Positions 18,758 to 43,300 are shown, counted from the stretch's first letter. The stretch is 44,088 nucleotides of DNA from Octopus bimaculoides (GCF_001194135.2 NC_069004.1:10617863-10661950); one strand, 5' to 3'. Made by a program: numbers and translations. The notes: generated by a model from the sequence alone, not told the origin.

Positions 18758-18801
<44 letters not shown>

Positions 18802-19259: not shown

Positions 19260-19293
<34 letters not shown>

Positions 19294-19394
19294 TNNNNNN
19301 NNNNNNNNNNNNNNNNNNNNNNNNNNNNNNNNNNNNNNNNNNNNNNNNNNNNNNNNNNNNNNNNNNNNNNNNNNNNNNNNNNNNNNNNNNNNNN

Positions 19395-22300
19395 CGTTAG
19401 TTTGTTCGTTCGTTCATACGTACGTATGTACATATGTACCTACTTATGTACGTTCGTTCGTACGTTCGTTCGTACGTTCATTCGTTTGTTCGTTCGTACA
19501 CACCTACGTTCAATTCTTCGTTCGTTCGTTTTTTTTTCGTACTTACGTACGTTCGTTCAATCGTTCGTTCATTTGTTTGATCGTTTGTTTGTTCGATCGT
19601 TCGTTCGTTCTTACATACGTACTTACGACGTATATCCGTACATACGTACGGACGTTCGTTCGTTGCCTCGTTCGTTAGTTGTTTTGTTCTTTCGTACGTA
19701 CGTACGTACGTTCGTTCATTTGGTCGTTCGTTCGTTTCATTCGTTCGTTCGTTCGTTTCATTCGTTCGTTCGTCCGTACGTACGTTCGTTCGTTCATTCA
19801 TATATATGTACGTAGGAACATACGTACGTTCTCTTGTTCGTTCGTTCGTTCGTCCGTTCTTTCGTTACTTCGTTCGTTATTTCGCTCGTTCATTCGTTTT
19901 TTTGTTTCGTTCGATCGTTCATTCTTTCGTACGTTCGTTTGTTTCGTTCTTCCGTACGTACGTACGATCATTCGTTTGTTCCTTCGCACATACGTACGTT
20001 CGTTTGTTCGTTCGTTCGTTCTTTCGTACGTACGTACATTCTTTCGTTCAATCGTTCGTTCGTACGTACGTGCGTACGTTCGTTAGTTTGTTCGTTCGTT
20101 CGCTCGTTCGTTCGTACGTTCGTTCGATATTTCGTGCTGACGTACAAACTTACGGACGAACGTTCGTTCGTCCGTTCGATCGATCTTTCTTTCGCACGTA
20201 TGTACGTACTTTCGTTTGTTCTTTGGTTCGTTTGTTCGTTCGTTCTTTCGTTCATTGGTTCGTACGTGCGTACGTTCGTTAGTTTGTTCATTCGTTCATA
20301 CGTACGTACGTACATATGTACCTACTTACGAACAAAGAAATGAGCATACGTATGTACGAACGAAAGAACGATTGAACGAACAAACGAAAGAACGAACGAG
20401 CGAGCGAAAGATTGAAAGAACGAACGTACGTACGAAAAGAAAACGAACGAAAGAATGATCGAAAGTACGAACGATCGAACGAACGAACATAGGTATGTAT
20501 GTACGTACAAACGACCGAACGAACGTACGTAAGTAGGTACATATGAACGTACGAACAAAGTAACGAACGTACGCGCGTACGAACGGACGTACGTTCGGTC
20601 ATTCTTACGCACGTACATTCGTTCGTTCGTTCGTATTTAGTAACGCATGTACGTTCGTTCGTACTTATGAACGTACGTACGATCATTCGTTCTATCGTTC
20701 TTTCGTAAGTACGTACGTACGCACATCCGTTCGTTCGTTCTTTCGTTTGTTCGTTCGATCGTTCGTTAATTCGTTCGTTAGTTCGTATGTAGGTACCTCC
20801 TAACGTACGTTCGTTCATTTGTTCGTTCGTACGTACGTACTTACGTACGTACGTACATTTATTCTTTCGTTCGTTCGTACGTACGTTCGTTAGTTCGTAC
20901 GTTCGTTCGTTCGTTCATTCATACGTATATACATATGGAAATACGTACGTGCGATCTTTCATTCGTTCGTTCGTTCATTTCGTTGGTAAGCTCGTTCTTA
21001 CGTACGTGCGTACGAGTGAGCGAACGAACGATATGAACGAACTAACGAACGAATAAACGAAAGAAAGAACGAACGAATGAACGAACGAACGAACGTACGT
21101 CCGTACGAATGTACGGACGAACGAATGTACGGACGTACGAACGAAGGTACGTACGTACGAACGAACGAACGAACAAACAAATGAACAAAAGAACGAACGA
21201 ACGTACGTATGTTCCTACGTACATATATATGAACGAACGAACGTACGTACGTGCGGACGAACGAACGAACGTACGTACGGACGAACGAACGAATGAAACG
21301 AACGAACGAACGATCGAACAACCGAACGAACAAAGAAACGGACGAACGTACGTATGAACGGACGAACGAACGAACGTACGTAGGTATGAAAAAAAACGAA
21401 CGAACAAAGAATTGAACGTACGTATGTACGAACGAACGAACGAACAAACGAACGTACGTAAATAGGTACATATGTACGTACGTACGTATGAACAAACTAA
21501 CGAACGTACGCACGTACGTACGTATGAACGAAAGAACGTACGTACGAAAGAACGAAAGAACCAACGAACGAACAAACGAACCAACGAAAGAACGAACGAA
21601 TGCACGTACGGACGAACTAACGAATGAAACGAACGAACGGACGAGCAAATGAACGAACGTACGTGCGTACGTACGGAAGAAAGAAAGAACGAACGAACGT
21701 CTGTACGTATGCACGGATTTACGCACGTAAGTATGTATGTAAGAACGAACGAACGATCGAGCAAACGGACGAACGTACGTATATTCGTACTTACATACGT
21801 ATGAATGAACGAACGAACGAACGAGCGTGCGTATGTTCGTACGTAATTATGTATGAACGTACGAACGAACGAACGAATGTACGTACGTACGAACGAACGT
21901 ACGCAGGTACAATCGAACGTACGTACGTAAGAACGAATGATCGTACGTATGAACAAATGTTCGAAGGAAGGAAAGAACGTGCGTACGTAAGTAAGTTCGT
22001 ACGTACGAACGAATAAACGAAAGAAGGAACGTAATTACGAAAGAACGAAAGAACGAACGAATGAACGTACGTATGTTCCTACGTGCATATATATGAATGA
22101 CCGAACGAACGAACATACGTACGTACGAACGAACGTTGTCAGAACGAATGAAATGAACGAACGTACGTACGAAAGAACTAACGAACGAAGCATTGAACGA
22201 ACGAACGTACGTAGGTACGAAAAAAAGACGAACAAAGAATTGAACTTACGTATGTACGAACGAACAAACGAACGAACATACGAACGTACGTAAGTAGGTA

Positions 22301-25300
22301 CATATGTACGTACGTACGTATGAACGAATGAACAAATTAACGAACGTACGCACGTACGTACGTACGAAAGAAAGAACGAACAACCGAACCAACGAACAAA
22401 CAAACGAACGAACGAAAGAACAAACGTATGTACGTAGGCACGAAAGAAATATCGAACGAACGTACGAAAGAATGAACGAACAAACGTACGTGCGAAGGAA
22501 CGAACGAACAAACGAATGAATGATCGTACATACGTACGGAAGAACGAAACAAACGAAAGAGCGAAAGACCGAACGAAGTAACGAAAGAACGGACGAACGA
22601 ACGAACGAGAGAACGTACGTATGTTCCTACAGATATATATATGAATGAACGAACGAACGAACGTACATACGTACGTACGAACGAACGTATGTAAGAACGA
22701 ACGAACGTACGTACGGACGAACGAACGAATGAAACGAACGAACGACCAAATGAACGAACGTACGTACGTACGAAAGAAAGAAAGAACTAACGAACGAACG
22801 TCCGTACGTATATACCGATTTACGTACGTAAGTCCGTATGTAAGAACGAACGAACGATCGAACAAACGGACGAACGTACGTATATTCGTACTTACATATG
22901 TATGAATGAACGAACAAACAAGCGTTCGTATGTACTTATGTATGAATGAACGAACGTACGAACGTACGAATGTACGAACGAATGAATGTACGTACGTACG
23001 AACGAACGTACGTACGTACGAACGAACGTACGTACGTACGAAAGAATGATCATACGTATAAACAAATGATCGAAGGAAGGAAAGAGAGTGCGTACGTAAA
23101 TAAGTTCGTACGTACGAACGAATAAACGAAAGAAGGAACGTAATTACGAAAGAACGAACGAACGAATGAACGTACGTATGTTCCTACGTACATATATATG
23201 AATGAACGAACGAACGAACGAACGTACGAACGAACGTATGTCAGAACGAACGAAAGTACGGACGGACGAACGAAGAAAAACCGAACGAACAAAGAAATGA
23301 GCGTACGTTTGTACGAACGAACAACCGAACGAAAGAACGATCGAAAGTACGAACGATTGAACGAACGAACAAACGTACGTAGATACGAAAAAAAAACGAA
23401 CGAACAAAGAATTGAACGTACGTATGTACGAACGACAAACGAACGAACGAAAGAACAAACGAACGTACATAAGGAGATACATATGTACGTAAGTACGTAT
23501 GAACGAACCAACAAACTAACGAACTTACGCACGTACGTCCGAATGAACGTACGTACGTACGAACGAAAGAACGTACGTACGTACGAAGGAACGTACGAGC
23601 GAACGAACGAACAAACTAACGAACGTACACACGTCCGAACGAACGAACATAAGAAAAAATGAACGAACGATCGAACGAAAGAATGTACGTACGTACGAAA
23701 GAACGAACGAACGAACGAACAAACGTACGTACGTACTTGCGAAGGTACGAACGAACAAACGAACGAACGAACGAATGATCGTTCGTACGTACGGAAGAAC
23801 GAAACAAACAAACGAAAGAAAGAACGAAAGAACGAACGATCGAATGAAGCAAACAAACGAATGAACGAACGAGCGAAAGAACGAACGAAGTAACGAAAGA
23901 ATGGACGAACGAACGAAGGAGAGAACGATCGAGCAAACGAAAGAACGTACGTACGTACGTATGTATGAACAAACGATGGAACGAATGAACAAACAAACTT
24001 ACGTACATAGGAATGAACGCATGTGCGAACGAAACAAAGATCGAACGAAAAAAAAACCAACGAACGTACGTACATACATCCGTACGTAGGAACGAGCGAA
24101 CGAACGTACAAACGAAGGTACGTACGAACGACCGTACGTACGAATGAATGAACGTACGAACGATCGAACAAACGAACAAAGGAAAGATCGAAGTAACGAA
24201 TGAACGTACGTACTTACGTACGTAAGAACGAACGAACGAACATACGTATACGTATGTACGTAAGTACGAACGAACGAAGGTACGTACGTATGTACGTAAG
24301 TACGAACGAACGATCGAACGAACGAAAGAAAGAACGTAAGAACGTAATTACGTCCGTACGACGTAACAACGAAGGAGCGAACAAACAAATGAACGAACGA
24401 ACTAACGAACGAATGTACGCACGTACGTACGTAGAAACGAACGACCGTACGCACGTATGTACGTACGTACGAAACATGAAAGAAACGAATGAAAGAACGT
24501 AAGTACGTACGTAAGAACGAACGAACGACAGAATTAACGAACGAACGAAAGAAGGAACGAACAAATGTAGGTACATACGTACGAACGAACGGACAAGCAT
24601 ACGTTCGACGGAACAAACGAACGAACGAACGATTGAACGAACGAACGAACAAACGAAAGAACGAACGAAAGTACGTACGTACGAACGAACGAGCGAGCGA
24701 AAGATTGAAAGAACGAACGTACGTACGAAGAAAAACGAACGAACAAAGAAATGAACGTACGTATGTATGAACGAACAACCAAACGAAAGAACGATCGAAA
24801 GTACGAACGATTAAACGAACGAACGAACGTACGCAGGTACGAAAAAAAAACGAACGAACAAAGAATTGAACGTACGTATGTACGAACGACAAACGAACGA
24901 ACAAACGAACGTACATAAGGAGGTACATATGTGCGTACGTACGTATGAACGAACGAACAAACTAACGAACTTACGCACGAACGAAAGAACGTACGTACGT
25001 ACGTACGAAGGAACATACGAGCGAACGAACGAACAAACGTACGTACATACTTGCGAAGGTACGAACGAACAAACGAACGAACGAACGAATGATCGTACGG
25101 ACGTACGTACGGAAGAACGAAACAAACGAACGAACGAGCGAGTGAAAGATTGAAAGAACGAACGTACGTACGAAAAAAACGAACGCACAAAGAAATGAAC
25201 GTACGTTTGTACGAACGAACAACCGAACGAAAGAACGATCGAAAGTACGAACGATTGAACGAACGAACGAACGTACGTAGATACAAAAAAAACGAACGAA

Positions 25301-28300
25301 CAAAGAATTGAACGTACGTATGTACGAACGACAAACGAACGAACGAACGAACAAACGAACGTACATAATGAGGTACATATGTACGTACGTACGTATGAAC
25401 GAACGAACAAACTAACGAACTTACGCACGTACGTCCGAACGAACGAACGAACGTACGTACGTACGAAAGAAAGAACGTACGTACGTACGTACGAACGTAC
25501 GAAGGAAAGTACGAACGAACGAACGTACGAGCGAACGAAAGAACAAATTAACGAACGTAAGCACGTACGTACGAACGAACGTAAGAAAAAAATGAACGAC
25601 CGATTGAACGAAAGAATGTACGTACGTACGAAAGAACGAACGAACGAACAAACGTACGTACGTACTTGCGAAGGTACGTACGAACAAACGAATGAACGAA
25701 CGAATGATCGTACGTACGTACGGAAGAACGAAACAAACGAACGAAAGAAAGAACGAACGAACAAGAGAACGACCGAAAGACCGAACGATCAAACGAAGCA
25801 AACAAACGAATAAACGAACGAGCGAAAGAACAAATGAAGTAACGAAAGAATGGACGACCGAACGATGGAGAGAACGATCGAGCAAACGAAAGAACGTACG
25901 TACGTAAGTATGTACGAACAAACGATGGANNNNNNNNNNNNNNNNNNNNNNNNNNNNNNNNNNNNNNNNNNNNNNNNNNNNNNNNNNNNNNNNNNNNNNN
26001 NNNNNNNNNNNNNNNNNNNNNNNNNNNNNNNNNNNNNNNNNNNNNNNNNNNNNNNNNNNNNNNNNNNNNNNNNNNNNNNNNNNNNNNNNNNNNNNNNNNN
26101 NNNNNNNNNNNNNNNNNNNNNNNNNNNNNNNNNNNNNNNNNNNNNNNNNNNNNNNNNNNNNNNNNNNNNNNNNTACGTACGAACGAACGAATTTAAGGAA
26201 AGAACGACCAAAAGAACGAAAGAACATGAAAGAAACGAATGAAAGAACGTAAGAACGTACGTAAGAACGAACGAACGACAGAATTAAAGAACGAACGAAA
26301 GAAGGAACGAACGATCGAACAAAAGAATTAACGAACAAATGTAGGCACATAATTACGAACGAACGAACAAGCGTACGTACGACGGAACAAACGAACGAAC
26401 GAATGATTGAACGAACGAAAGAACAAACGAAAGAACGAACGAAAGTACGTACGTACGAACGAACGAGCGACCGAAAGATTGAAAGAACGAACGTACTTAC
26501 GAAAAAAAACCGAACGCACAAAGAAATGAACGTACGTTTGTACGAACGAAAGAACGATCGAAAGTACGAACAATTGAACGAACGACCGATTGAACGAAAG
26601 AATGTACGTACGTACGAAATAACGAACGAACGAACAAACGTACGTACGTACTTGCGAAGGTACGAACGAACAAACGAACGAACGAACGAATTATCGTACG
26701 TAACTACGGAAGAAAGAAACAAACGAACGAACGAAAGAATGAACGAACGAAAGAACAAACAATCGAACGAAGCAAACAAACGAATGAACGAACGAACGAA
26801 AGAACGGACGAAGTAGCGAAAGAATGGACGAACGAACGAACGAGAGAACGATCGAGCAAAGGAAAGAACGTACGTACGTACGTATGTACGAACAAACGAA
26901 GGAACAAATGAACAAACAAACTTACGTACGTAGGAACGAACGCAGGTGTGAACGTAAGAAAGATCGAACGAAAAAACAAACGAACGTACGAACGAACGAA
27001 CGTATGTACAAACATCCGTACGTAGGAACGAGCGAACGAGCGAACGAACGTATGTACGTACGAACGAAAGGACTAACGTACATCCATACATACGAACGAA
27101 CGAATTTAAGGAAAGAACGAACACACGGACGAAAGAACGATTGAACATATGTACGTACATACGTAAGAATGAACGTACGAACGAGCGTACGTACGAACGA
27201 CCGTACGTACGTACGAATGAATGAACGTACGTACGTACGAACGAACGTATGAACGTACGTACGTACGAACGAACGTATGAATAAACGAAGGAAAGAAAAA
27301 AGTAACGAATGAACGTACGTACTCACGTACGTGAGAACGAACGAAAGAACGTACGAAGGAACGAGCGAACGAACGAACAAACTAACGAACGTACGCACGT
27401 ACGTACGAACGAACGAACGTACGAATGAATGAACGGACGATTGAACGAAAGAATGTACGTACGTACGAAAGAACGAACGAATGAATGAACGAACAAGCGT
27501 ACGTACATACGTACGAAGTTAGGAACGAACAAACGAACGAACGAACGAATTATCGTACGTACGAAGTAGCGAAAGAATGGACGAACGAACGAACGAGAGA
27601 ACGATCGAGCAAAGGAAAGAACGTACGTACGTATGTACGAACAAACGAAGGAACAAATGAACAAACAAACTTACATACGTAGGAACGAACGCAGGTGTGA
27701 ACGAAAGAAAGAACGAACGAAGAAACAAACGAACGTACGTACGAACGAACGAACGTACGTACGTACGTACGTACGAACGAAAGAACTAAAGTACATCCAT
27801 ACATACGAACGAACGAATTTAAGGAAAGAACGAACATACGGACGAAAGAATGATTGAACATATGTACGTACATACGTAAGAATGAACGTACGAACGAAAG
27901 AAAGAACGAACGAACAAGAGAACGAACGAACGAAAGAACGAGCGAACGAACAAACTAACGAACGTAAGCACGTACGTACGAACGAACGTAAGAAAAAAAA
28001 TGAACGACCGATTGAACGAAAGAATGTACGTACGTACGAAAGAACGAACGAAACGAACAAACGTACGTACGTACTTGCGAAGGTGCGAACGAACAAACGA
28101 ACGAACGAACGTACCTACGAACGAACAAATGAACGAAAGAACGTACGAAGGAACGAGCGAACGAACGATCAAACTAACGAACGAACGTACGAATGAATGA
28201 ACGAACGATTGAACGAAAGAATGTACGTACGTAAGAAAGAACGAACGAATGAACGAACAAGCGTACGTACATACGTACGAAGATACGAACGAACAAACGA

Positions 28301-31300
28301 ACGAACGAACGAACGAATTATCGTACGGACCTTCGGAAGAAAGAAACAAACGAACGAACGAAAAAATGAACGAACGAAAGAACGAACAATCGAACGAAGC
28401 AAATGAACGAACGAACGAAAAAACGGACGAAGTAGCGAAAGAATGGACGAAAGAACGAACGAGAGAACGATCGAGCAAAGGAAAGAACGTACGTACGTAC
28501 GTACGTATGTACGAACAAACGAAGGAACAAATGAACAAACAAACTTACGTACGTAGGAACGAACGCAGGTGTGAACGAAAGAAAGATCGAACGAAAAAAC
28601 AAACGAACGTACGTACGAACGAACGTATGTACAAACTTCCGTACGTAGGAACGAGCGAACGAGCGAACGAGCGAACGAACGTACGTACGTACGTACGAAC
28701 GAAAGGACTAACGAAAATCCATACATACGAACGAACGAATTTAAGGAAAGAACGAACAAACGGACGAAAGAACGATTGAACATATGTACGTACATACGTA
28801 AGAATGAACTACGAACGAGCGTAAGTACGTACGAACGATCAAACGAACGAACGAATGTAAGAACGAAGTAACGAATGAACGTACGTAATTTTGTACGTAA
28901 GAACGAACGAATGGACGAACGAACGATGGAGAGAACGATCGAGCAAACGAAAGAACGTACGTACGTAAGTATGTACGAACAAACGATGGAACGAATGAAC
29001 AAACAAACTTACGTACGTAGGAATGAACGCATGTGCGAACGAAAGAAAGATCGAACGAAAAAACAAACGAACGTACGTACGAACGAACGAATGTGCGTAC
29101 ATACATCCGTACGTAGGAACGAGCGAACGAACGTACGAACGAAAGACCTAACGTACATCCATACATACGAACAAACGAAGGAAAGAAAGAAGTAACGAAT
29201 GAACGTACGTACTCACGTACGTGAGAACGAACGAACGAACGAACGTACGTACGAACTAACAAATGAACGAAAGAACGTACGAAGGAACGAGCGAACGAAC
29301 GAACAAACTAACGAACGTACGCACGTACGAACGAACGAACGTACGGATGAATGAACGAACGATTGAACGAAAGAATGTACGTACGTACGAAAGAACGAAC
29401 GAACGAATGAACGAACAAGCGTACGTACATACGTACGAAGATACGAACGAACAAACGAACGAACGAAAGAATAAACGAACGAAAGAACGAACAATCGAAC
29501 GAAGCAAACAAACGAATGAACGACCGAACGAAAGAATGGACGAAGTAGCGAAAGAATAGACGAACGAACGAACGAGAGAACGATCGAGCAAAGGAAAGAA
29601 CGTACGTACGTACGTATTTACGAACGAACGAACGAGAGAACGATCGAGCAAAGGAAAGAACGTACGTACGTACGTATGTACGAACAAATGAAGGAACAAA
29701 TGAACAAACAAACTTACGTACGTAGGAACGAACGCAGGTGTGAACGAAAGAAAGATCGAACGAAAAAACAAACGAACGTACGTACATACATCCGTACGTA
29801 GAAACGAGCGAAGGAGCGAACGAACGTACGTACGAACGAAAGGACTAACTGCGAAGTTACGAACGAACAAACGGACGAACGAACGAATGATCGTACGTAC
29901 GTTCGGAAGAACGAACGAAGTAACGAAAGAATGGACGAACGAACGATGGAGAGAACGATCGAGCAAACGAAAGAACGTAAGTACGTACGTATGTACGAAC
30001 AAACGATGGAACGTATGTACGTACATACGTAAGAATGAACGTACGAACGAGCGGACGTACGAACGACCGTACGTACGTACGAATGAATGAACGAACGATT
30101 GAACGAAAGAATGTACGTACGTACGAAAGAACGAACAAGCGTACGTACATACGTACGAAGATACGAACGAACAAGCGAACGAACGAACGAATTATCGTAG
30201 GTACCTACGGAAGAAAGAAACAAACGAACGAACGAAAGAATGAACGAACGAAAGAACGAACAATCGAACGAAGCAAACAAACGAATGAACGAACGAGAGA
30301 ACGATCGAGCAAAGGAAAGTACGTACGTACGTATGTACGAACAAACGAAGGAACAAATGAACAAACAAACTTACCTACGTAGGAACGAACGCAGGTGTGA
30401 ACGAAAGAAAGATCGAACGAAAAAACAAACGAACGTACGTACATACATCCGTACGTAGGAACGAGTGAACGAGCGAACGAACGTACGTACGAACGAAAGG
30501 ACGAACAATAGAACGAAGCAAACAAACGAATGAACGAACGAACGAAAGAACGGACGAAGTAGCGAAAGAATGGACGAACGAAGGAACGTACATACATACA
30601 TCCGTACGTAGGAACGAGCGAACGAGCGAACGAACGTACGTGCGTACGTACGTACGTACGTATGTACGAACAAACGAAGGAACAAATGAACAAACAAACT
30701 TACGTACGTAGGAACGAACGCAGGTGTGAACGAAAGAAAGATCGAACGAAAAAACAAACGAACGTACGTACGAACGAACGAACGTACGTACATACATCCG
30801 TACGTAGGAACGAGCGAACGAACGTACGTACTNNNNNNNNNNNNNNNNNNNNNNNNNNNNNNNNNNNNNNNNNNNNNNNNNNNNNNNNNNNNGAAAGGAC
30901 AAACAATCGAACGAAGCAAACAAACGAATGAACGAACGAACGAAAGAACGGACGAAGTAGCGAAAGAATGGACGAACGAACGAACGAGCGAGAGAACGAT
31001 CGAGCAAAGGAAAGAACGTACGTACGTACGTACGTACGTACGTACGTATGTACGAACAAACGAAGGAACAAATGAACAAACTTACGTACGTAGGAACGAA
31101 CGCAGGTGTGAACGAAAGAAAGATCGAACGAAAAAACAAACGAACGTACGTACGAACGAACGAACGTACGTACATACATCCGTACGTAGGAACGAGCGAA
31201 CGAACGTACGTACTTACGAACGAAAGAACTAACGTACATCCATACATACGAACGAACGAATTTAAGGAAAGAACGAATAAACGGACGAAAGAACGATTGA

Positions 31301-34300
31301 ACATAGGTACGTACATACGTAAGAATGAACTACGAACGAGCGTACGTACGAACGAACGATCGAACGAACGAACGAAGGTAAGAACGAAGTAACGAATGAA
31401 CGTACGTAATTTTGTACGTAAGAACGAACAGACGAATGATGGTACGTACCTACGGAAGAACGAAACAAATGAACGAAAGAAATAACGAACGAACAAGAGA
31501 ACAAACGAACGAAGGAACGAACGATCGAACGAAGCAAACAAACGAATGAACGAACGAGCGAAAGAACAAACGAAGTAACGAAGGAATGGACGAACGAACG
31601 ATGGAGAGAACGATCGAGCAAACGAAAGAACGTACGTACGTAAGTATGTACGAACAAACGATGGAACGAATGAACAAACAAACTTACGTACGTAGGAATG
31701 AACGCATGTGCGAACGAAAGAAAGATCGAACGAAAAAACAAACGAACGTACGTACGAACAAACGAATGTGCGTATATACATCCGTACGTAGGAACGAGCG
31801 AACGAACGTACGAACGAAAGACCTAACGTACATCCATACATACGAACGAACGAATTTAAGGAAAGAACGAACAAACGAACGAAAGAACGATTGAACGTAT
31901 GTACGTACATACGTGAGAATGAACGTACGAACGAGCGTACGTACGAACGACCGTACGTACGTACGAATGAATGAACATACGTACGTACGAACGATCGAAT
32001 GAACAAACGAAGGAGAGAAAGAAGTAACGAATGAACGTACGTACTCACGTACGTGCGAGCGAAAGAACGAACGAATGTACGTACGAACGAACAAATGAAC
32101 GAAAGAACGTACGAAGGAACGAGCGAACGAACGAACAAACTAACGAACCTAGGCACGTACGTACGAACGAACGAACGTACGAATGAATGAACGAACGATT
32201 GAACGAAAGAATGTACGTACGTACGAAAGAACGAACGAACGAATGAACGAACAAGCGTACGTACATACGTACGAAGATACGAACGAACAAACGAACGAAT
32301 GAATGAATTATCGTACGTACCTACGGAAGAAAGAAACAAACGAACGAACGAAAGAATAAACGAACGAAAGAACGAACAATCGAACGAAGCAAACAAACGA
32401 AAGAACGGACGAAGTAGCGAAAGAATGGACGAACGAGAGAACGATCGAGCAAAGGAAAGAACGTACGTACGTACGTATGTACGAACAAACGAAGGAACAA
32501 ATGAACAAACAAACTTACGTACGTAGGAACGAACGCAGGTGTGAACGAAAGAAAGATCGAACGAAAAAACAAACAAACGTACGTACGAACGAACGAACGT
32601 ACGTACATACATCCGTACGTAGGAACGAGCGAAGAAGCGAACGAACGTACGTACGTACGAACGAAAGGACTAACTGCGAAGTTACGAACGAACAAACGAA
32701 CGAACGAACGAATGATCGTACGTACGTACGGAAGAACGAACGAAGTAACGAAAGAATGGACGAACGAACGATGGAGAGAACGATCGATGAAACGAAAGAA
32801 CTACGTACGAACAAACGATGGAACGTATGTACGTACATACGTAAGAATGAACGTACGAACGAGCGGACGTACGAACGACCGTACGTACGTACGAATAAAT
32901 GAACGTACGTACGTACGAACGTACGAATGAACAAACCGAAGGAAAGAAAGAAGTAACGAATGAACGTACGTCCTCACGTACGTGAGACCGAACGAACAAA
33001 CGAACGAACGTACGTACGAACGAACAAATGAACGAAAGAACGTACGAAGGAACGAGCGAACGAACGAACAAACTAACGAACGTACGCACGTACGTACGAA
33101 CGAACGTAAGAAAAAAATGAACGACCGATTGAACGAAAGAATGTACGTACGTACGAAAGAACGAACGAACGAACGTACCTACGAACGAACAAATGAACGA
33201 AAGAACGTATGAAGGAACGAGCGAACGAACGAACAAACCAACGAACGTACGCACGTAAGTACAAACGAACGAACGTACGAACGAATGAACGAACGATTGA
33301 ACGAAAGAATGTACGTACGTACGAAAGAACGAATGAACGAACAAGCGTACGTACATACGTACGAAGATACGAAAGAACAAACGAACGAACGAACGAATTA
33401 TCGTACGTACCTACGGAAGAAAGAAACAAACGAAAGAATGAACGAACGAAAGAACGAACAATCGAACGAAACAAACAAACGAACGACCGTACGTACGTAC
33501 GAATAAATGAACGTACGAATAAATGAACGTACGTACGTACGAACGTACGAATGTACAAACCGAAGGAAAGAAAGAAGTAACGAATGAACGTACGTACTCA
33601 CGTACGTGAGACCGGACGAACAAACGAACGAACGTACGTACGAATGAACGAAAGAACGTACGACGGAACGAGCGAACGAACGAACAAACTAACGAACGTA
33701 CGCACGTATGTACGAACGAACGTAAGAAAATAATGAACGACCGATTGAACGAAAGAATGTACGTACGTACGAAAGAACGAACGAACGAATGAACGAACAA
33801 GCGTACGTACATACGTACGAAAATACGAAAGAACAAACGAACGAACGAACGGACGAACGGATTATCGTACGTACCTACGGAAGAAAGAAACAAACGAAAG
33901 AACGAAAGAATGAACGAACGTACGAAAGAACGGACGAAGTAGCGAAAGAATGGACGAACGAACGAACGAGAGAACGATCGAGCAAAGGAAAGAACATACG
34001 CACGTACGTATGTACGAACAAACGAAGGAACAAATGAACAAACAAACTTACGTACGTAGGAACGAACGCAGGTGTGAACGAGAGAAAGATCGAACGAAAA
34101 AACAAACGAACGTACGTACATATATCCGTACGTAGGAACGAGCGAACGAACGTACGTACGTACGAACGAAAGGACAAACAATCAAACGAACGAACGAATT
34201 ATCGTACGTACCTACGGAAGAAAGAAACAAACGAACGAACGAAAGAATGAATGAACGAAATAACGAACAATCGAACGAAGCAAACAAACGAATGAACGAA

Positions 34301-37300
34301 CGAACGAAAGAACGGACGAAGTAGCGAAAGAATGGACGAACAAACGAACGAGAGAACGATCGAGCAAAGTAAAGAACGTACGTACGTACGTATGTACGAA
34401 CAAACGAAGGAACAAATGAACAAACAAACTTAGGTACGTAGGAACGAACGCAGGTGTGAACGAATGAAAGATCGAACGAAAAAACAAACGAACGAAGGAA
34501 CGTAGTACATACATCCGTACGTAGGAACGAGCGAACGAGCGAACGAACGTACGTACGTACGAACGAAAGGACAAACAATCGAACGAAGCAAACAATCGAA
34601 TGAACGACCTAACGAACGAACGGATGAAGTAGCGAAAGAATGGACGAACGAACGAACGAGAGAACGATCGAGCAAAGGAAAGAACGTACGTACGCACGTA
34701 TGTACGAAGAAACGAAGGAACAAATGAACAAACAAACTTACGTACGTAGGAACGAACGCAGGTGTGAACGAAAGAAAGATCGAACGAAAAAACAAACGAA
34801 CGTACGTACGAACGAACGAACGTACGTACATACATCCGTACGTAGGAACAAGCGAACGAGCGAACGAACGTACGTACGTACGAATGAAAGGACGAACAAT
34901 CGAACGAAAGAAGGATTGAACGTATGTAAGTACATACGTAAGAATGAACGTACGAACGACCGTACGTACGTACGAATGAATGAACATACGTACGTACGAA
35001 CGATCGAATGAACAAACGAAGAAAAGAAAGAAGTAACGAATGAACGTACGTACTCACGTACGTGAGAACGAACGAACAAATGAACGAAAGAACGTACGAA
35101 GGAACGAGCGAACGAACGAACATACATCCGTACGTAGGAACGAGCGAACGAACGTACGTACGTACGAACGAATGGACTAACGTACATCCACACATACGAA
35201 CGAACGAACTTAAGGAAAGAACGAACAAACGGACGAAAGAACGATTGAACATATGTACGTACATACGTAAGAATGAACGTACGAACGAGCGTGCGTACGA
35301 ACAAACGATCGAACGAACGAACGAAGGTAAGAACGAAGTAAATAATGAACGAACGTAATTTTGTACGTAAGAAAGAACGATCGAATGATGGTACGTACGT
35401 ACGGAAGATCGAAACAAAGGAACGAAAGAAAGAACGAACGAACAAGAGAACGAACGAACGTAAGCACGTACGTACGAACGAACGTAAGAAAAAAATGAAC
35501 GGCCGATTGAACGAAAGAATTAGGTACGTACGTACTTGCGAAGGTACGAACGAACAAACGAACGAACGAACGAACGAACGTACCTACGAACGAACAAATG
35601 AACGAAAGAACGTACGAAGGAACGAGCGAACGAACGAACAAACTAACGAATGTACGCACGTACGTACGAACGAACGAACGTACGAATGAATGAACGAACG
35701 ATTGAACGAAAGAATGTACGTACGTACGAATATACGAACGAACAAACGAACGAACGAACGAATTATCATACGTACCTACGGAAGAAAGAAACAAACGAAC
35801 GAACGAACGAATGAACGTACGAACGAGAGGACGTACGAACGACCGTACGGACGTACGAATGAATGAACGTACGTACGTACGAACGATCGACTGAACAAAC
35901 GAAGGAAAGAAAGAAGTAACGAATGAATGTACGTACTCACGTGCGTGAGTACGAACGAACGAACGAACGAACAAACTAACAAACGTACGCACGTACGTAC
36001 GAACGAACGAACGTACGAATGAATGAACGAACGATTGAACGAAAGAATGTACGTACGTACGAAAGAACGAACGAACGAATGAACGAACAAACGTACGTAC
36101 ATACGTTCGAAGATACGAGCGAACAAACGAACGAATGAACGAATTATCGTACGTACCTACGGAAGAAAGAAAGAAACGAACGAACGAAAGAATGAACGAA
36201 CGAAAGAACGAACAATCGAACGAAGCAAACAAACGAATGAACGAACGAACGAAAGAACGGACGAAGTAGCGAAAGAATGGACGAACGAACGAACGAGAGA
36301 ACGATCGAGCAAAGGAAAGAACGTACGTACGTATGTATGTCCGAACAAACGAAGGAACAAATGAACAAACAAACTTACGTACGTAGGAACGAACGCATGT
36401 GTGAACGAATGAAAGATCGAACGAAAAAACAATCGAACATACGTACGAACGAACGAACGTACGTACATACATCCGTACGTAGGAACAAGCGAACGAGCGA
36501 ACGAACGTACGTACGTACGAATGAAAGGACGAACAATCGAACGAAGCAAACAAACGAATGAACGAACGAACGAAAGAACGGACGAAGTAGCGAAAGAATG
36601 GACGAACGAACGAACGAGAGAACGATCGAGGNNNNNNNNNNNNNNNNNNNNNNNNNNNNNNNNNNNNNNNNNNNNNNNNNNNNNNNNNNNNNNNNNNNNN
36701 NNNNNNNNNNNNNNNNNNNNNNNNNNNNNNNNNNNNNNNNNNNNNNNNNNNNNNNNNNNNNNNNNNNNNNNNNNNNNNNNNNNNNNNNNNNNNNNNNNNN
36801 NNNNNNNNNNNNNNNNNNNNNNNNNNNNNNNNNNNNNNNNNNNNNNNNNNATACGTACGAACGAACGAACGTACGTACATACATCCGTACGTAGGAACAA
36901 GCGAACGAGCGAACGAACGTACGTACGTACGAATGAAAGGACGAACAATCGAACGAAGCAAACAAACGAATGAACGAACGAACGAAAGAACGGACGAAGT
37001 AGCGAAAGAATGGACGAACGAACGAACGAGAGAACGATCGAGGAAAGGAAAGAGCGTACGTACGTACGTATGTACGAACAAACGAAGGAACAAATGAACA
37101 AACAAACTTACGTACGTAGGAACGAACGCAGGTGTGAACGAAAGGAGGATCGAACGAAAAAACAAGCGAACGTACGTACGAACGAACGAACGTACGTACA
37201 TACATCCGTACGCAGGAACGAGCGAACGAACGTACTTACGTACGAAAGAAAGGACTAATTGCGAAGTTACGAACGAACAAACGAACGAACGAACGAATGA

Positions 37301-40300
37301 TAGTACGTACGTACGGAAGAACGAACGAAGTAACGAAAGAATGGAAGAACGAACGATGGAGAGAACAATCGAGCAAACGAAAGAACGTACGTACGTACGT
37401 ATGTACGAACAAACGATGGAACGTATGTACATACATACGTAAGAATGAACGCACGAACGAGCGTACGTACGAACAACCGTACGTACGAATGAATGAACGT
37501 ACGTACGTACGAAAGATCGAATGAACAAACGAAGGAAAGAAAGAAGTAACGAATGAACGTTCGTACTCACGTACGTGAGAACGAACGAACGAACGAACGT
37601 ACCTACGAACGAACAAATGAACGAAAGAACGTACGAAGGAACGAGCGAACGAACGAACAAACTAACGAACGTACGCACGTACGTACGAACGAACGAACGA
37701 ACGAACGAAAGAAAGAACGAACGAACGTACGTGCGTAAGAATGGCCGTTCGTACGTACGCGCGTACGTTCGTTACTTTGTTTGTTTGTTCGTTAGTTCGT
37801 TCTTTCATTTGTTTGTTCGTTCCTTCGTTGTTACGTACGTACGGACGTATTTGCGTTCGTTCGTACGTAGGTACTTATATACGTACCTACGTACGTAATT
37901 ACGTTCGTTCGTTCTTACGTTCTTTCTTTCGTTCGTTCGAATTTACGTACGTACGTACGTAACTTCGTTCGTTCGTACCTACGTACATATGTACGTACGT
38001 TCGTACTTTCGTTCGTTCGATCGTTCGTACGTACGTAGGTTCGTTCGCTCTTTCGCTCGTTCCTACGTANNNNNNNNNNNNNNNNNNNNNNNNNNNNNNN
38101 NNNNNNNNNNNNNNNNNNNNNNNNNNNNNNNNNNNNNNNNNNNNNNNNNNNNNNNNNNNNNNNNNNNNNTCATTCGTTCGCTCGTTCGTTCGTACGTTCG
38201 TTCGATATTTCTTCCGCACATACGTACGTACGTTTGTTCTTTCGTTCGTTTGTTCGTTGGTTCCTTTGTTCATTCGTTGGTTCGTTTGTTCGTTCGTTCT
38301 TTCGTACGTACTTACGTAAGGGCGTACGTTCGTTAGTTTGTTCATTCGTTCATACGTACGTACGTACATATGTACCTACTTACGTACGTTCGTTTCTTCA
38401 TTCGTTCGTTCCTTCTTTCGTACATACATACGTCCAATTTGTTCGTTCGTTTTTTGTCGTACCTACGTACGTTCTTTCGTTCAATCGTTCGTTCGTTCGT
38501 TCGTTCGTTCTTTCGTTCTACGTACGTTCGTCCGTTTCATTGTTCGTTCGTTTGTTCGGTCGTTCGTTGGTTCTTACTTACGTACGTAAATCCGTACGGA
38601 CGTTCGTTCGTTGCCTCGTTCGTTAGTTATTTCGTTCTTTCGTACGTACGTACGTTCGTTCGTTAGTTCGTTCATTCATATATATGTACCTAGAAACATA
38701 CGTTCGTTCGTTCGTTCGTTCGTTCGTTCGTAATTACGTTTCTTCTTTCGTTTATTCGTTTGTACTTACGAACTTACTTATGTACGCACGTTCTTTCCTT
38801 CCTTCGAGCCTTTGTTCATACGTACGTTCGTTCGTTTGTACGTACGTAGGTTCGTTCGTACATTCGTACGTAAGTACGTTCGTTCGTTCGTTCATTTATA
38901 CATATGTACGTACGAACATACGCACGCTCGTTCGTTCGTTCATTCATAGATATGTACGTACGAATATACGTACGTTCGTTCGTTCATTCGTTCGTTCGTT
39001 CATTCGTTCGTTCGTTCATTCGTTCGTTCGTTCTTTCGTTTGTTCGTTCGTTAGTTCGTTCATATCGTTCGTTCGCTCACACATACGTACGTACGTACGT
39101 ACTAACGAGCTTACCAACGGAATGAACGAACGAACGAACGAAAGAACCAAAGTACGAACGATCGCACGTACGTACGTACGTACGAACAAACGAACGAACG
39201 AAAGAGTGAATGTACGTACGTACGTAAGTACATACGTACGATCGAACAAACGAACGAACGAACGTAAGTACGTACGAACTAACGAAAGAATGAACGAACG
39301 ATCGAACGAACAAACGAAAGAACGTACTAACGAACGATCGAAATGACGAACAATAGAACAAACAAACCAACAAAGGAACGAACGTTCGTACGGCCGAACG
39401 TACGTACGATCGAACGTACGAAACTAACGATGGAACAAACGAACGAATGAACGAAACAAACAAATGAACGAACTATCGACCGAACGAACGAACAAACGAA
39501 CGAAAGAATGAATGAACGAACGAACGAACAATAGAACGAATGAACGAAAGAAAGAACGAACGAACGTACGTGCGTAAGAATGACCGAACGTACGTACGCG
39601 CGTACGCTCATTAGTTTGTTCGTGTGTTCGTTCGTTCGTACGTACATATGTACCTACTTACGTACGTTCGTTCGGTCGTTTGTACATACATACATTCCTA
39701 CGTTCGTTTGTTCGATCGTTCGTATTTTCGATCGTTCTTTCGTTCGTTGTTGTTCGTTCATTTCTTTGTTCGTTCGTTTTGTTTTCGTACGTACGTTCGT
39801 TCTTTCAATCTTTCGCTCGCTCGTTCGTTCGTACGTACGTAATTTCGTTCGTTCTTTCGTTTGTTCGTTCGTTCGTTGGTTCAATCGTTCGTTCGTTCCT
39901 ACGTACGTTCGTTCGTTTGTTCCGTCGTACGTACGCTTGTTCGTTCGTTCGAACGTATGTACCTACATTTGTTCGTTAATTCGTTTGTTCGATCGTTCGT
40001 TCCTTCTTTCGTTCGTTCGTTAATTCTTTCGTTCGTTCGTTCTTACGTACGTACTTACGTTCTTTCATTCGTTTCTTTCATGTTTCGTACGTACGTTCAT
40101 ACGTGCGTACGTTCATACGTGCGTACGTTCGTTCGTTCCTACGTACGTACGTGCGTACATTCGTTCGTTAGTTCGTTCGTTCATTTGTTTGTTCGTTCCT
40201 TCGTTGTTACGTACGTAGGTACTTATATACGTACCTACGTACGTTCGTTTGTTCTTACGTTCGTTCGTTCTTACGTTCTTTCTTTCGTTCGTTCGTAATT

Positions 40301-43300
40301 ACGTACGTACATACGTACCTTCGTTCTTTCGTTCGTTCGTTGGTTTTTACGTACGTAAGTACGTAGGTTCATTCTTTACTTCGTTCTTTCCTTCGTTCGT
40401 TCGTTCGATCGTTCGTACGTACGTACATTCATTCATTCGTACGTACGTACGCTCGTTCGTACGTAAATTCTTACGTATGTACGTACATACGTTCAATCGT
40501 TCTTTCCTTCGTTTGTTCGTTCGTTTTTTAATTTCGTTCGTTCGTACGTACGGACGTACGTTAGTTCTTTCGTTCGTACGTACGTACGTTCGTTCGACCG
40601 TTCGTACGTACGGATGTTAGTTCGTTCGATAGTTTCGTACGTTTGATCGTACGAACGAACGAGCGAACGAACGAACACACTAACGAACGTAAGCACGTAC
40701 GTACGAACGAACGTAAGAAAAAATGAACGACCGATTGAACGAAAGAATGTACGTACGTACGAAAGAACGAACGAACGAACGAACAAACGTACGTCCGTAC
40801 TTGCAAAGGTACGAACGAACAAACGAACGAACGAACGAATGATCGTACGTACGTACGGAAGAACGAAACAAACGAACGAAAGAAAGAACGAACGAACAAA
40901 AGAACGAAAGAACGAAAGAACGAACAAACGAACGAAAGAACGATTGAACGTATGTACGTACATACGTAAGAATGAACGTACAAACGAGCGTACGTACGAA
41001 CGAACTACGTACGTACGAATGAATGAACGTACGTACGTACGAACGATCGAATGAACGAACGAACTAACGAACGAATGTACGCACGTACGTACGTAGGAAC
41101 GAACGAACGTACGCACGTATGTACGTACGAAACATGAAAGAAACGAATGAAAGAACGTAAGTACGTACGTAAGAACGAACGAACGAACGACAGAAGGAAC
41201 GAACGATCGAACAAAAGAATTAACGAACAAATGTAGGTATATACGTACGAACGAACGGACATGCGTACGTACGACGGAACAAACGAACGAACGAACGATT
41301 GAACGAATGAAATACCAAACGAAAGTACGTACGTACGAACGAACGAGCGAGCGAAAGATTGAAAGAAAGATCGTACGTACGAAGAAAAACGAACGAACAA
41401 ACGTACGTACGTACTTGCGAAGGTACGAACGAACAAACGAACGAACGAACGAATGATCGTACGTACGTACGAAAGAACGAAACAAACGAACGAAAGAAAG
41501 AACGAACGAACAAGAGAACGAAAGAACGAACTAACGAACGATCGAAAGGACGAACAATAGAACAAACGAACCAACAAAAGAACGAACGTTCGTGCGGCCG
41601 AACGTACGTACGATCGAACGTACGAAACTAACGAAGGAACAAACGAACGAACGAACGAAACAAACAAATGAACGAACTATCGACCGAACGAACGAACAAA
41701 CGAACGAAAGAATGAATGAACGAACGAGCGAACAAAAGAACGAATGAACAATTGAAAGAAGATCAAACGTACGTACGTAAGTACATATGTACGTAGGTAC
41801 GTAGGTACGTACGAAAGAGTGAATGTACGTATGTACGTACCTACGGACAAAAGAGCGAACGAATGAACAAACTAACGACCGAACGAACGAACGAAAGGAC
41901 AACCGAACGCACGAATGGATGTGCGTACGTACGTACGTAGGAAAGAACGATAGAACGAATGAACGTACGTACGTTCTTAAGTAAGTACGTCCGTTCATAA
42001 GTAAGTACGTACGAACGATCCAACGAACGAACGTACGTTACTAAATACGAACGAACGAACGAACGAACGAACGAAAGAAAGAACGAACGAACGTACGTGC
42101 GTAAGAATGACCGAACGTACGTACGTTCGTACGTACGCGCGTACGCTCATTAGTTTNNNNNNNNNNGTAAGAATGACCGAACGTACGTACGTTCGTACGT
42201 ACGCGCGTACGCTCATTAGTTTGTTCGTGTGTTCGTTCGTTCGTACGTACATATGTACCTACTTACGTACGTGCGTTCGGTAGTTTGTACATACATACAT
42301 ACCTACGTTCGTTCGTTCGATCGTTCGTACTTTCGATCGTTCTTTCGTTCGTTTGTTCGTTCGTACATACATACGTTCATTTCTTTGTTCGTTCGTTTTT
42401 TTTCGTACGTACGTTCGTTCTTTCAATCTTTCGCTCGCTCGTTCGTTCGTGCGTACGTAATTTCGTTCGTTCTTTCGTTTGTTCGTTCGTTGGTTCTATC
42501 GTTCGTTCGTTCCTACGTACGTTCGTTCGTTCGTTTGTTCCGTCGTACGTATGCTTGTTCGTTCGTTCGTACGTATGTACCTACATTTGTTCGTTAATTC
42601 GTTTGTTCGATCGTTCGTTCCTTCTTTCGTTCGTTCATTCTTACGTACGTACTTACGTTCTTTCATTCGTTTCTTTCATGTTTCGTACGTACGTTCATAC
42701 GTGCGTACGTTCGTTCGTTCCTACGTACGTACGTGCATACATTCGTTCGTTAGTTCGTTCGCTCATTTGTTTGTTCGTTCCTTCGTTGTTACGTACGTAG
42801 GTACTTATATACGTACCTATGTACGTTCGTTCGTACGTACGTAATTACGTTCGTTCGTTCTTACGTTCTTTCGTTCGTTCGTTCGTACGTAGGTTTATTC
42901 TTTACTTCGTTCTTTCCTTCGTTCGTTCGTTCGATCGTTCGTACGTACGTACGTTCATTCATTCGTACGTACGTACGCTCGTTCGTACGTAAATTCTTAC
43001 GTATGTACGTACATACGTTCAATCGTTCTTTCCTTCGTTTGTTCGTTCGTTTTTTAATTTCGTTCGTTCGTACGTACGGATGTACGTTAGTTCTTTCGTT
43101 CGTACGTACGTACGTTCGTTCGACCGTTCGTACGTACGGATGTATGTACGTACGATCGTTCGTTTGTTCTTTCGTTTGCACATGCGTTCGTTCCTACGTA
43201 CGTACGTTTGTTCATTCGTTCCTTCGTTTGTTCGTGCGTACGTACGTACATTCTTTCGTTTGCTCGATCGTTCTCTCGTTCGTTCGTTCGTAAATTCTTT

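What the first reader, a model, noticed from the sequence alone, without database searches (positions are those of the whole stretch)
20555..42215. All four CGAA-to-TTCG strand switches carry the same palindromic junction cassette
Seen: orientation flips at ~20328, 20575, 21000, 37760, 39095, 39600, 40648, 42140 and 43703. Each CGAA-to-TTCG flip contains the 14-bp palindrome CGTACGCGCGTACG (20568-20581, 37754-37767, 39593-39606, 42132-42145) beside GTGCGTAAGAATG(A/G)CCG or its reverse complement. I did not spot this cassette elsewhere by eye, apart from the gap-flanking duplicate at 42198. Inference: one fold-back/template-switch event at a GTAC palindrome was later amplified with the array, or the cassette is a recurrent inversion site.
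Basis: partly seen in the sequence, partly recalled or inferred. Interest (0 to 1): 0.75.

Follow-up and report, generated by a model that had tools for sequence, protein, structure and literature searches.

The report
Copied strand-switch junction in a tetranucleotide satellite
A 24-kb degenerate (CGAA)n/(CGTA)n satellite, probably from an octopod genome, flips orientation nine times; its four head-to-head flips are diverged copies of one old junction spread by segmental duplication, which is ordinary satellite behaviour.

Summary
The window holds a ~24.4-kb degenerate (CGAA)n/(CGTA)n array (19395-43780) with nine orientation flips. Each of the four CGAA-to-TTCG flips carries CGTACGCGCGTACG beside GTGCGTAAGAATGRCCG, and neither motif occurs elsewhere in the window.

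The fifth copy (42198) is an assembly duplicate: an exact 56-bp contig-end overlap was left unmerged around a 10-N gap.

The 14-mer is not the breakpoint. It is a one-base variant of a normal array motif, CGTACGCACGTACG. Nine copies of that motif have the same upstream flank (12 one-mismatch copies in all). The strand switch lies 4-16 bp beyond the 14-mer, in a self-complementary CGTA tract. The "cassette" is also a three-substitution variant of another normal array piece.

All four junctions share these private variants and mosaic flank homology. Three of them (J1, J3, J4) share the ~115-270-bp right flank. J1 with its tail-to-tail partner is an inverted copy of the J3 module. So there was one ancestral junction, later duplicated, once in inverted orientation.

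A fold-back or template-switch origin is plausible but not shown. Only J2 keeps mirrored arms (46 bp, 54-bp spacer).

This is an ordinary satellite feature of low interest.

The parts
19395..43780 (.). Degenerate tetranucleotide (CGAA)n/(CGTA)n satellite array of ~24.4 kb. It is a mosaic of 300-730-bp duplicates at 80-96% identity. There are ten orientation blocks.
   Evidence: TRF finds period 4 with 69-72% matches. Orientation bins. Self-BLAST. CpG o/e is 3.28 against 0.39 in the flank.
20555..20612 (-). Junction J1, head-to-head, cassette in reverse complement. The perfect 14-mer is at 20568-20581, the switch interval at 20586-20591, and the cassette reverse complement at 20596-20612.
37731..37781 (+). 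Junction J2. The cassette is at 37731-37747, the switch at CCG|TTCG (~37747/37748), and the 14-mer at 37754-37767. The right flank TTCGTTACTTTGTT is shared with J1. J2 is the only junction with fold-back-like mirrored arms: ~37646-37691 against ~37745-37790, 91% identical, with a 54-bp spacer.
39570..39622 (+). Junction J3. The cassette is at 39570-39586 and the 14-mer at 39593-39606. The right flank CTCATTAGTTTGTTCG is shared with J4.
42097..42156 (+). Junction J4. The cassette is at 42097-42113. The true strand switch lies in the perfect 18-bp palindrome CGAACGTACGTACGTTCG (42112-42129). The 14-mer is at 42132-42145. The contig ends 11 bp later.
42157..42222 (.). Assembly artefact: 10 N followed by a 56-bp exact repeat of 42101-42156 (unmerged k-1 contig overlap). 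The palindrome at 42198 is J4 counted twice.
20981..21014 (+). Tail-to-tail junction T2. It carries the unique 16-mer CGTTGGTAAGCTCGTT, which is the reverse-complement partner of T3.
39076..39119 (-). Tail-to-tail junction T3. The switch lies in an (ACGT)4 run, and the same unique 16-mer sits on the minus strand at 39104-39119.
20298..20327 (.). Tail-to-tail junction T1, in ACGTACGTACGTACATATGTAC. This contains the 12-bp palindrome GTACATATGTAC.
40640..40660 (.). Tail-to-tail junction T4, at the 8-bp palindrome TCGTACGA.
43697..43715 (.). Tail-to-tail junction T5 (TTCGTACCTACGAA). It precedes the last ~80 bp of the array.
20359..21877 (-). Module M1, an inverted copy of module M3. It is collinear across two switch points (J1 and T2).
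   Evidence: The best BLAST alignment pairs 20359-21877 with 39861-38281.
38281..39861 (+). Module M3: the end of the minus-orientation (TTCG) block 37761-39087, then T3, ~510 bp in plus orientation, J3, and the start of the next minus-orientation block.
41372..43221 (+). Module M4, a direct duplicate of M3 from ~39175 to 40627 that includes J4. Identity is 79-89%. It has ~320 extra bp (41782-42100) that resemble J1's flank.
37655..37691 (+). One example of the canonical array unit 'Y': GAACAAACTAACGAA-CGTACGCACGTACG-TACGAACG. The nine copies have their 14-mers at 21505, 22345, 27390, 29316, 33081, 35984 and 37670 (+) and at 20065 and 20261 (-). The non-cassette arm of every junction derives from this unit.

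Best explanation
The region is a long, degenerate tetranucleotide satellite: (CGAA)n with frequent CGTA units, CpG-rich, built as a mosaic of segmental duplicates. It lies in a gapped short-read draft of what is probably an octopod cephalopod genome. One ancestral head-to-head strand switch arose inside a self-complementary CGTA tract. It joined two ordinary array pieces. One piece is 'X' (...CGTAC-TAAGAATGAACG-), on the CGAA side. The other is 'Y' (GAACAAACTAACGAA-CGTACGCACGTACG-TACG) in inverted orientation. That junction lineage then acquired private substitutions. X became GTGCGTAAGAATGRCCG, and the 14-mer of Y became the perfect palindrome CGTACGCGCGTACG. The junction was then copied, together with 0.1-1.6 kb of surrounding array, by the same unequal-exchange or segmental-duplication processes that built the rest of the array. 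This gave J2, J3 and J4 in one orientation. J1, together with a tail-to-tail junction, was copied in the opposite orientation. The copies later diverged by 4- and 12-bp slippage indels in the CGTA tract, by point changes and by flank exchange. Shown: the array, the flips, the uniqueness of the cassette, its derivation from canonical units, the shared ancestry of the four junctions, the inverted module, and the duplicate at the gap. Inferred: that the first switch was made by a fold-back or template switch (or by inverted microhomology recombination) in the CGTA tract, and that the junction has no function of its own.
For: Array and flips. The palindrome and the 17-mer occur only at the four junctions. 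Alignment A2 shows all four junctions collinear with seven canonical Y copies through the 14-mer. They differ there only by A to G, and then leave the canonical sequence in a CGTACGTACG tract to continue as TTCGGYCATTCTTACGCACGTACGTTCG. The cassette differs by three substitutions from a 9-copy canonical piece ATACG-TAAGAATGAACG. Shared flanks: the MAFFT alignment, longest exact matches of 28-79 bp between junction pairs, and M3/M4 at 79-89% identity over 1.0-1.6 kb spanning the junction. Inverted module: an exact 16-mer found only at T2 and T3, on opposite strands, and a single collinear alignment of 20359-21877 with 39861-38281 across two flips. The junctions lie inside contigs, not at scaffold joins. 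Each has its own sequence variant within +/-28 bp, so at least four distinct junction sequences exist in the assembly. Strand switches inside simple satellites are known: more than 200 inversion breakpoints were reported in human HSat3B5 and beta satellite (10.1101/2021.07.12.452052).
Against: Flank similarity alone is weak statistically, because any two array pieces align at 70-78% and many at 80-96%. Unconstrained local-score nulls gave p of about 0.13-0.5 for most flank pairs, and only the J3/J4 right flank was clearly above the null (p of about 0.003). J2 shares only ~110 bp on the left and ~28 bp through the 14-mer on the right; beyond that, its right flank matches a different array unit. 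Mirrored arms expected of a fold-back are absent at J1, J3 and J4. The association of switch points with ACGT tracts is only marginal (8 of 9 against 58% of random positions, p of about 0.05, with fewer independent events). About 5% of the array's 57-mers are repeated, and J3 and J4 share exact 57- and 79-bp blocks. The order of segments, and which right flank belongs to which junction, therefore cannot be guaranteed from this assembly. No reads could be examined.
Confidence: 0.72

Rival explanations
1. The cassette is a recurrent inversion hotspot. It pre-existed in the array, and independent strand switches happened next to it several times.
For: J2's right flank beyond ~28 bp belongs to a different array unit from that of J1, J3 and J4. 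Because every canonical Y copy has the same proximal flank, independent joins to different Y copies would look alike for ~30 bp.
Against: There is no un-inverted cassette anywhere in the 24 kb, even with 2 mismatches allowed. All four junctions share the private CGCG variant in the non-cassette arm, which no other Y copy has. J1 and J2 share the rare TTCGTTACTTTGTT variant. J1, J3 and J4 share ~115-270 bp of right flank.
Confidence: 0.08
2. Assembly artefact. The flips or the multiplicity of junctions were created by a short-read de Bruijn assembler and scaffolder working in a repeat. The causes would be chimeric contigs, unmerged overlaps, or haplotypes laid in tandem.
For: The scaffold is heavily gapped. 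Three gaps are flanked by exact 56-, 56- and 193-bp overlaps. The 42198 copy is certainly such an artefact. About 5% of 57-mers are repeated. J3 and J4 share exact 57- and 79-bp blocks, and a contig breaks exactly at J4.
Against: J1, J2 and J3 lie 300-5000 bp inside gap-free contigs. The palindromes are 14-18 bp, far shorter than k, so they cannot create hairpin paths. The flanks are not reverse complements of each other. The four junctions differ in sequence within one k-mer of the switch. J3 and J4 flanks are only 79-89% identical, too diverged to be alleles.
Confidence: 0.12
3. The palindromic cassette is a functional element, such as a cruciform or hairpin site, a protein-binding site or a recombinase target, and is kept at block boundaries by selection.
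For: As single strands, the junction 80-mers fold at -15 to -22 kcal/mol, against -11 to -14 for control Y units.
Against: Any head-to-head CGAA/TTCG join is self-complementary by construction. Two of the four junctions fold no better than their shuffles (z of -1.3 and +0.45). The copies differ by indels exactly in the putative stem. There are only low-complexity ORFs and no recombinase nearby. Tail-to-tail ends lack the cassette.
Confidence: 0.03

Closest known systems
Strand switches (inversion breakpoints) inside simple satellite arrays, e.g. human HSat3B5, beta satellite and divergent alpha satellite (Altemose et al., 10.1101/2021.07.12.452052)
   Same: A long tandem array of a short unit with many internal orientation flips. 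The breakpoints are embedded in, and amplified with, duplicated array segments.
   Different: The unit here is a CpG-rich tetranucleotide in a probable cephalopod. The array seen is only 24 kb, in a draft assembly. Its chromosomal location and copy number are unknown.
Fold-back inverted duplications with a short single-copy spacer (Hermetz et al. 2014, PMC3907307; short templated inverted duplications at breaks, PMC11724301)
   Same: A head-to-head junction at very short self-complementary microhomology. At J2, 46-bp mirrored arms flank a 54-bp spacer that contains the cassette.
   Different: Mirrored arms are missing at the other three copies and are short at J2. There is no terminal deletion or large duplicated arm to test. 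The event is old and overlaid by later duplications.
ODIRA, template switching between leading and lagging strands at short inverted repeats, giving direct-inverted-direct copies (PMC10766183)
   Same: Alternating orientation blocks are bounded by one head-to-head and one tail-to-tail junction. Each junction lies at a short palindromic tract. The blocks 39600-40648 (-), 40648-42139 (+) and 42139-43703 (-) are homologous in a direct-inverted-direct pattern.
   Different: All blocks of the array are built from the same repeat mosaic, so this homology is expected anyway. The junctions are not mirror-symmetric, and no replication origin is known.
Microsatellite-derived satellites with irregular higher-order structure (established knowledge of satellite evolution by slippage and unequal exchange)
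   Same: A period-4 core, ~70% unit identity, and nested duplicates of 0.3-0.7 kb at 80-96% identity.
   Different: It contains a self-complementary variant unit (CGTA), which gives built-in palindromic tracts. It is strongly CpG-rich (o/e 3.3) in a CpG-depleted flank (o/e 0.39).

Membership tests
Simple-sequence (microsatellite-derived) satellite array | Head-to-tail tandem repetition of a short unit over kilobases | tested here: met
   TRF finds period 4 (CGAA/CGTT) with 69-72% matches, in rows covering 19451-43674. Orientation bins show continuous array from 19401 to 43800.
Simple-sequence (microsatellite-derived) satellite array | Higher-order or segmental duplication structure within the array | tested here: met
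   382 self-BLAST pairs, the best 300-730 bp long at 80-96% identity. There is no fixed long period.
Simple-sequence (microsatellite-derived) satellite array | Presence at many loci, or in heterochromatin, in the genome | not testable with these tools
The cassette is absent from the metagenome and viral collections.
Intra-satellite strand-switch (inversion) breakpoints | The array unit changes strand inside one continuous array | tested here: met
   Nine flips. Eight lie inside gap-free contigs, and J4 lies at a contig end with a 56-bp overlap.
Intra-satellite strand-switch (inversion) breakpoints | Breakpoints confirmed by reads that span them | not testable with these tools
Fold-back inverted duplication | Arms that are reverse complements of each other directly flanking a short spacer | tested here: inconclusive
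   In the mirror BLAST of each junction, J2 has 46-bp arms (91%) with a 54-bp spacer. J1, J3 and J4 have no in-register mirror. A Y unit within 100 bp upstream of a given point would occur by chance about 5% of the time; this is my estimate from 12 motif copies in 24 kb.
Fold-back inverted duplication | Microhomology or self-complementary sequence at the switch point | tested here: met
   The switch lies in CGTACGTACG. J4 has the perfect 18-bp palindrome CGAACGTACGTACGTTCG.
ODIRA-type inverted triplication | Direct-inverted-direct copies of one segment bounded by two short inverted repeats | tested here: inconclusive
   Block 39600-40648 matches block 42139-43703 directly (83-89%). Block 40648-42139 matches the reverse complement of 42139-43703 (80%, 94% in a 252-bp core). 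The same unit mosaic fills the whole array, so this is not specific.
Site-specific invertible segment (recombinase target) | The same site in inverted orientation at both ends of each inverted block | tested here: not met
   The cassette is present only at head-to-head ends. The tail-to-tail ends carry other sequences.
Site-specific invertible segment (recombinase target) | A recombinase gene nearby | tested here: not met
   The window has only low-complexity or repeat-derived ORFs. An array-ORF search gave only generic FVRS-repeat hits.
Scaffolding artefact (unmerged contig overlap) | The sequence before the gap is identical to the sequence after it | tested here: met
   This applies to the 42198 copy only: 42101-42156 equals 42167-42222, 56/56. 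The same 56-bp signature occurs at gap 11337-12082, and a 193-bp one at gap 36632-36850.

The most novel reading that the evidence does not exclude
The self-complementary CGTA units scattered through this CGAA array act as built-in strand-switch hotspots. Replication template switching, or inverted microhomology recombination, in (CGTA)n tracts would then repeatedly create seamless inversions. That would make this CpG-rich cephalopod satellite a natural model of microsatellite-mediated inversion. It would also explain why nearly all nine flips, of at least five independent origins, sit in palindromic tracts.
Probability: 0.2. Interest if true: 0.45.

Novelty: new member of a known kind. Interest (0 to 1): 0.2.

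Why it matters
It matters mainly as housekeeping. The striking palindromic cassette is a lineage marker of one duplicated inversion breakpoint inside a simple satellite. It is not a recombination signal or a mobile element. One of its five apparent copies, and several 'gaps', are scaffolding artefacts that inflate the array.

If long reads confirm the structure, the locus is a compact, datable example of how a strand switch inside a satellite is propagated by segmental duplication. It would also show how self-complementary variant units (CGTA) may seed such switches.

Tried and rejected
No read or long-read test of any junction was possible, and read laying was therefore not used.
2. Rfam and tRNA scans of the window found nothing.
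3. A protein search with a junction-spanning array ORF returned only generic FVRS low-complexity translations of unrelated (TTCG)-like microsatellites. No related locus could be fetched.
4. Exact scans for the cassette in metagenome contigs and viral contigs gave 0 hits. The genome-contig collection holds only bacteria and archaea and was not used.
5. Ungapped autocorrelation showed no fixed higher-order period.
6. Anchored global and unconstrained local alignment scores of the flanks against random array pairs did not discriminate, because the whole array is self-similar. I relied instead on rare shared variants and unique landmarks.
7. I tested a simple model in which the palindrome is the crossover product of two antiparallel copies of the quasi-palindromic 14-mer. 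It predicts a long perfect palindrome at head-to-head junctions and canonical flanks at tail-to-tail ones. Neither is seen, so I rejected it.
8. I rejected quasipalindrome 'perfecting' by hairpin templating as the source of the A-to-G change, because the changed base would lie in the loop (inference).
9. I rejected a foreign-insert or transposon-end origin of the cassette, because it is three substitutions from a 9-copy array piece.
10. Literature searches for a described octopus or cephalopod CGAA/AACG satellite found nothing relevant.
Full report
**What the window is**

The 44,088-bp window is a heavily gapped scaffold with 16 runs of N. The first 19 kb contain dinucleotide microsatellites and at least six copies, on both strands, of a ~400-bp SINE-like element. 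An ORF read from that element has one named relative, a hypothetical protein of Argonauta hians (E 1.7e-7). The sequence therefore probably comes from an octopod cephalopod. This is a lead, not a proof. Rfam and tRNA scans found nothing.

From 19395 to about 43780 the sequence is one degenerate tetranucleotide array. TRF reports period 4 (CGAA/CGTT) at 69-72% matches.

Read in unit orientation, the array is 45% A and 12% T, with CpG o/e of 3.28. The non-N left flank has CpG o/e of 0.39. Among units flanked by CGAA on both sides, 41% are CGAA. The commonest variants are CAAA (12%), AGAA (8%), CGAT and TGAA (5% each) and CGTA (4%). Runs of the self-complementary CGTA unit cover 18-23% of the array.

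There is no fixed long period. Self-BLAST instead shows a mosaic of 300-730-bp duplicates at 80-96% identity, on a background of 70-78% between any two pieces.

**Checking the observation**

Tetramer counts in 100-bp bins and extrema of cumulative strand skew give ten orientation blocks. The flips fall at 20311, 20586, 21003, 37742, 39087, 39597, 40648, 42118 and ~43703.

The perfect 14-mer CGTACGCGCGTACG occurs only at 20568, 37754, 39593, 42132 and 42198. The 17-mer GTGCGTAAGAATGRCCG occurs only at 20596(-), 37731, 39570 and 42097, even with one mismatch allowed.

**The gaps**

- **42157-42166.** The 10-N gap is flanked by an exact 56-bp suffix-equals-prefix overlap (42101-42156 = 42167-42222). 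The same 56-bp signature flanks the gap at 11337-12082. This points to contig ends that overlap by k-1 in a k=57 graph and were scaffolded rather than merged. The palindrome at 42198 is thus J4 counted twice.
- **36632-36850.** This gap is flanked by an exact 193-bp overlap.
- **30833-30892.** This gap is flanked by a 338-bp end-to-start match at 90%.
- **25930-26173 and 38070-38169.** These show no overlap, so continuity there is unknown.

Array orientation is the same on both sides of every gap except the one at J4.

J1, J2 and J3 lie 300-5,000 bp inside gap-free contigs. The flips are therefore not scaffolding orientation errors.

About 5% of the array's 57-mers are repeated. J3 and J4 share exact blocks of 57 and 79 bp. 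That explains why a contig ends at J4. It also means the long-range order of segments cannot be guaranteed.

**What the cassette really is**

Twelve one-mismatch versions of the 14-mer occur in the array. Nine of them, read in unit orientation, are CGTACGCACGTACG preceded by GAACAAA(C/T)TAAC(G/A)AA and followed by TACGAACG. I call this canonical piece Y.

I aligned the four junctions, read so that the non-cassette arm is in CGAA orientation, with seven Y copies (alignment A2). All four are collinear with Y through the 14-mer and differ there only by A to G. They leave the canonical sequence 4-16 bp later, inside a CGTACGTACG tract.

In J4 the switch lies in a perfect 18-bp palindrome, CGAACGTACGTACGTTCG (42112-42129). 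The cassette itself is three substitutions away from another canonical piece, GTACATACG-TAAGAATGAACG, which has nine copies.

Three conclusions follow:

- The 14-bp palindrome is not the breakpoint. It is a private one-base variant of a normal array motif and sits next to the breakpoint.
- The cassette is not foreign DNA.
- Both arms of the junction are ordinary array.

**One origin or several**

All four junctions share the private CGCG variant in one arm and the private three-substitution cassette in the other arm. They have the same relative order and spacing, apart from 4- and 12-bp indels in the CGTA tract.

Beyond the core, the copies share flanks in a mosaic pattern.

- **J3 and J4.** They share a 79-bp exact stretch. 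Their flanks align at 79-89% over 1.0-1.6 kb spanning the junction.
- **J1, J3 and J4.** Read as its reverse complement, J1 shares the right flank with J3 and J4 over ~270 bp of alignment, with a ~115-bp high-identity core (CATATGTACCTACTTACG ... TTTCAATCTTTCGCTCGCTCG).
- **J1 and J4.** They also share ~80-150 bp of left flank (CGTTACTAAATACGAACG).
- **J1 and J2.** They share a 28-bp exact stretch that includes the rare TTCGTTACTTTGTT variant.
- **J2 and J4.** They share 59 bp exactly on the cassette side.

The tail-to-tail junction T2 (20981-20996) and T3 (39104-39119) carry an exact 16-mer found nowhere else, on opposite strands. The best alignment of 20359-21877 is one collinear match to the reverse complement of 38281-39861, running across two flips. 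A module holding both a tail-to-tail and a head-to-head junction was therefore duplicated in inverted orientation. That single event accounts for the three flips near 20.3-21.0 kb.

Unconstrained alignment-score nulls were uninformative, because the whole array is self-similar. The case rests on the rare shared variants and unique landmarks.

The recurrent-hotspot reading is disfavoured. No un-inverted cassette exists in the window, and the tail-to-tail ends lack the cassette. J2's right flank beyond ~28 bp does belong to a different array unit. I attribute that to later unequal exchange, but it leaves a small probability that J2 was partly independent.

**Mechanism of the first switch**

A switch inside a self-complementary CGTA tract is what either of two processes would produce: a fold-back or template switch, or recombination between inverted microhomologies. 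These are established models (PMC3907307, PMC10766183, PMC11724301).

Eight of the nine switch intervals contain or abut a CGTA-type palindromic tract. However, 58% of random array positions also have such a tract within 10 bp. With copies discounted there are at most five independent events, so the association is suggestive only.

Mirror-image arms, the hallmark of a fold-back, are absent at J1, J3 and J4. At J2, a Y unit at ~37646-37691 is mirrored by the right arm at ~37745-37790 (46 bp, 91%), with a 54-bp spacer that contains the cassette. This could be the remnant of the original fold-back, with the cassette as its spacer. Since Y occurs about once per 2 kb, chance is about 5% (my estimate).

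Single-strand folding of the junctions (-15 to -22 kcal/mol against -11 to -14 for controls) shows no more than is expected of any CGAA/TTCG join. The mechanism therefore remains an inference.

**Comparison with known systems**

Strand switches inside simple satellites are well documented. More than 200 inversion breakpoints have been reported in human HSat3B5 and beta-satellite arrays, and inversions occur in divergent alpha satellite (10.1101/2021.07.12.452052).

This locus behaves the same way: a breakpoint embedded in the array is copied with it. I found no published description of this cephalopod tetranucleotide satellite. A protein-level search for related arrays returned only generic low-complexity matches. 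The cassette is absent from the metagenome and viral collections.

**Verdict**

- "Fold-back at a GTAC palindrome" is plausible, but the named 14-mer is a marker rather than the breakpoint.
- "Recurrent inversion site" is not supported.
- The 42198 copy is an assembly artefact.

This is a new example of a known kind of satellite architecture, seen in a draft assembly that cannot vouch for long-range order. Interest is low.

Noticed in passing
window 11337-12082, 36632-36850, 42157-42166, 30833-30892: Gaps are flanked by exact suffix-equals-prefix overlaps of 56, 193 and 56 bp, and by a 338-bp overlap at 90%. These are contig ends that overlap (k-1 = 56) but were scaffolded with N instead of merged. 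The gap lengths are therefore spurious, and the sequence is duplicated.
   Followed up: yes
window 19395-43780 versus 1-19294: The array has CpG o/e of 3.28, while the non-N left flank has 0.39. The commonest variant units include CAAA and TGAA, the products expected from CpG transitions. This is a 24-kb CpG-rich island of repeats in a CpG-depleted genome.
   Followed up: partly
window 66-560(-), 2850-3270(+), 5650-5985(-), 6130-6235, 10245-10440, 14982-15062, 18270-18466: Copies of a ~400-bp SINE-like element with an internal (TA/CA)n stretch, 85-97% alike. An ORF read from it hits a hypothetical protein of Argonauta hians, the only clue to the organism.
   Followed up: partly
window 20981-20996 and 39104-39119: Two tail-to-tail (TTCG-to-CGAA) junctions share an exact 16-mer, CGTTGGTAAGCTCGTT. 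It is found nowhere else and lies on opposite strands. So these flips also have a copied junction cassette, as part of an inverted ~1.5-kb module.
   Followed up: yes
window ~37646-37691 and ~37745-37790: At J2 only, a 46-bp inverted repeat (91%) flanks a 54-bp spacer that contains the cassette. This may be the remnant of the original fold-back.
   Followed up: partly
window 43781-44088: Unique DNA follows directly after the array. It contains two CACGTG boxes, a CCAAT box, TATAAATA and an ATG at 44047 (MTSAVATSATRVYY...) that runs off the window. It looks like a promoter and first exon abutting the satellite.
   Followed up: no
window 16130-16406, 3580-3783, 18038-18169: Short tandem duplications unrelated to the array: 96-99 bp in three copies (two identical), 102 bp in two copies (84%), and 66 bp in two copies (80%).
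   Followed up: no
window 39600-40648, 40648-42139, 42139-43703: Three neighbouring blocks are homologous in a direct-inverted-direct pattern (83-89% direct; 80-94% inverted). This resembles an inverted triplication, but the same unit mosaic fills the whole array, so it is not specific evidence.
   Followed up: partly
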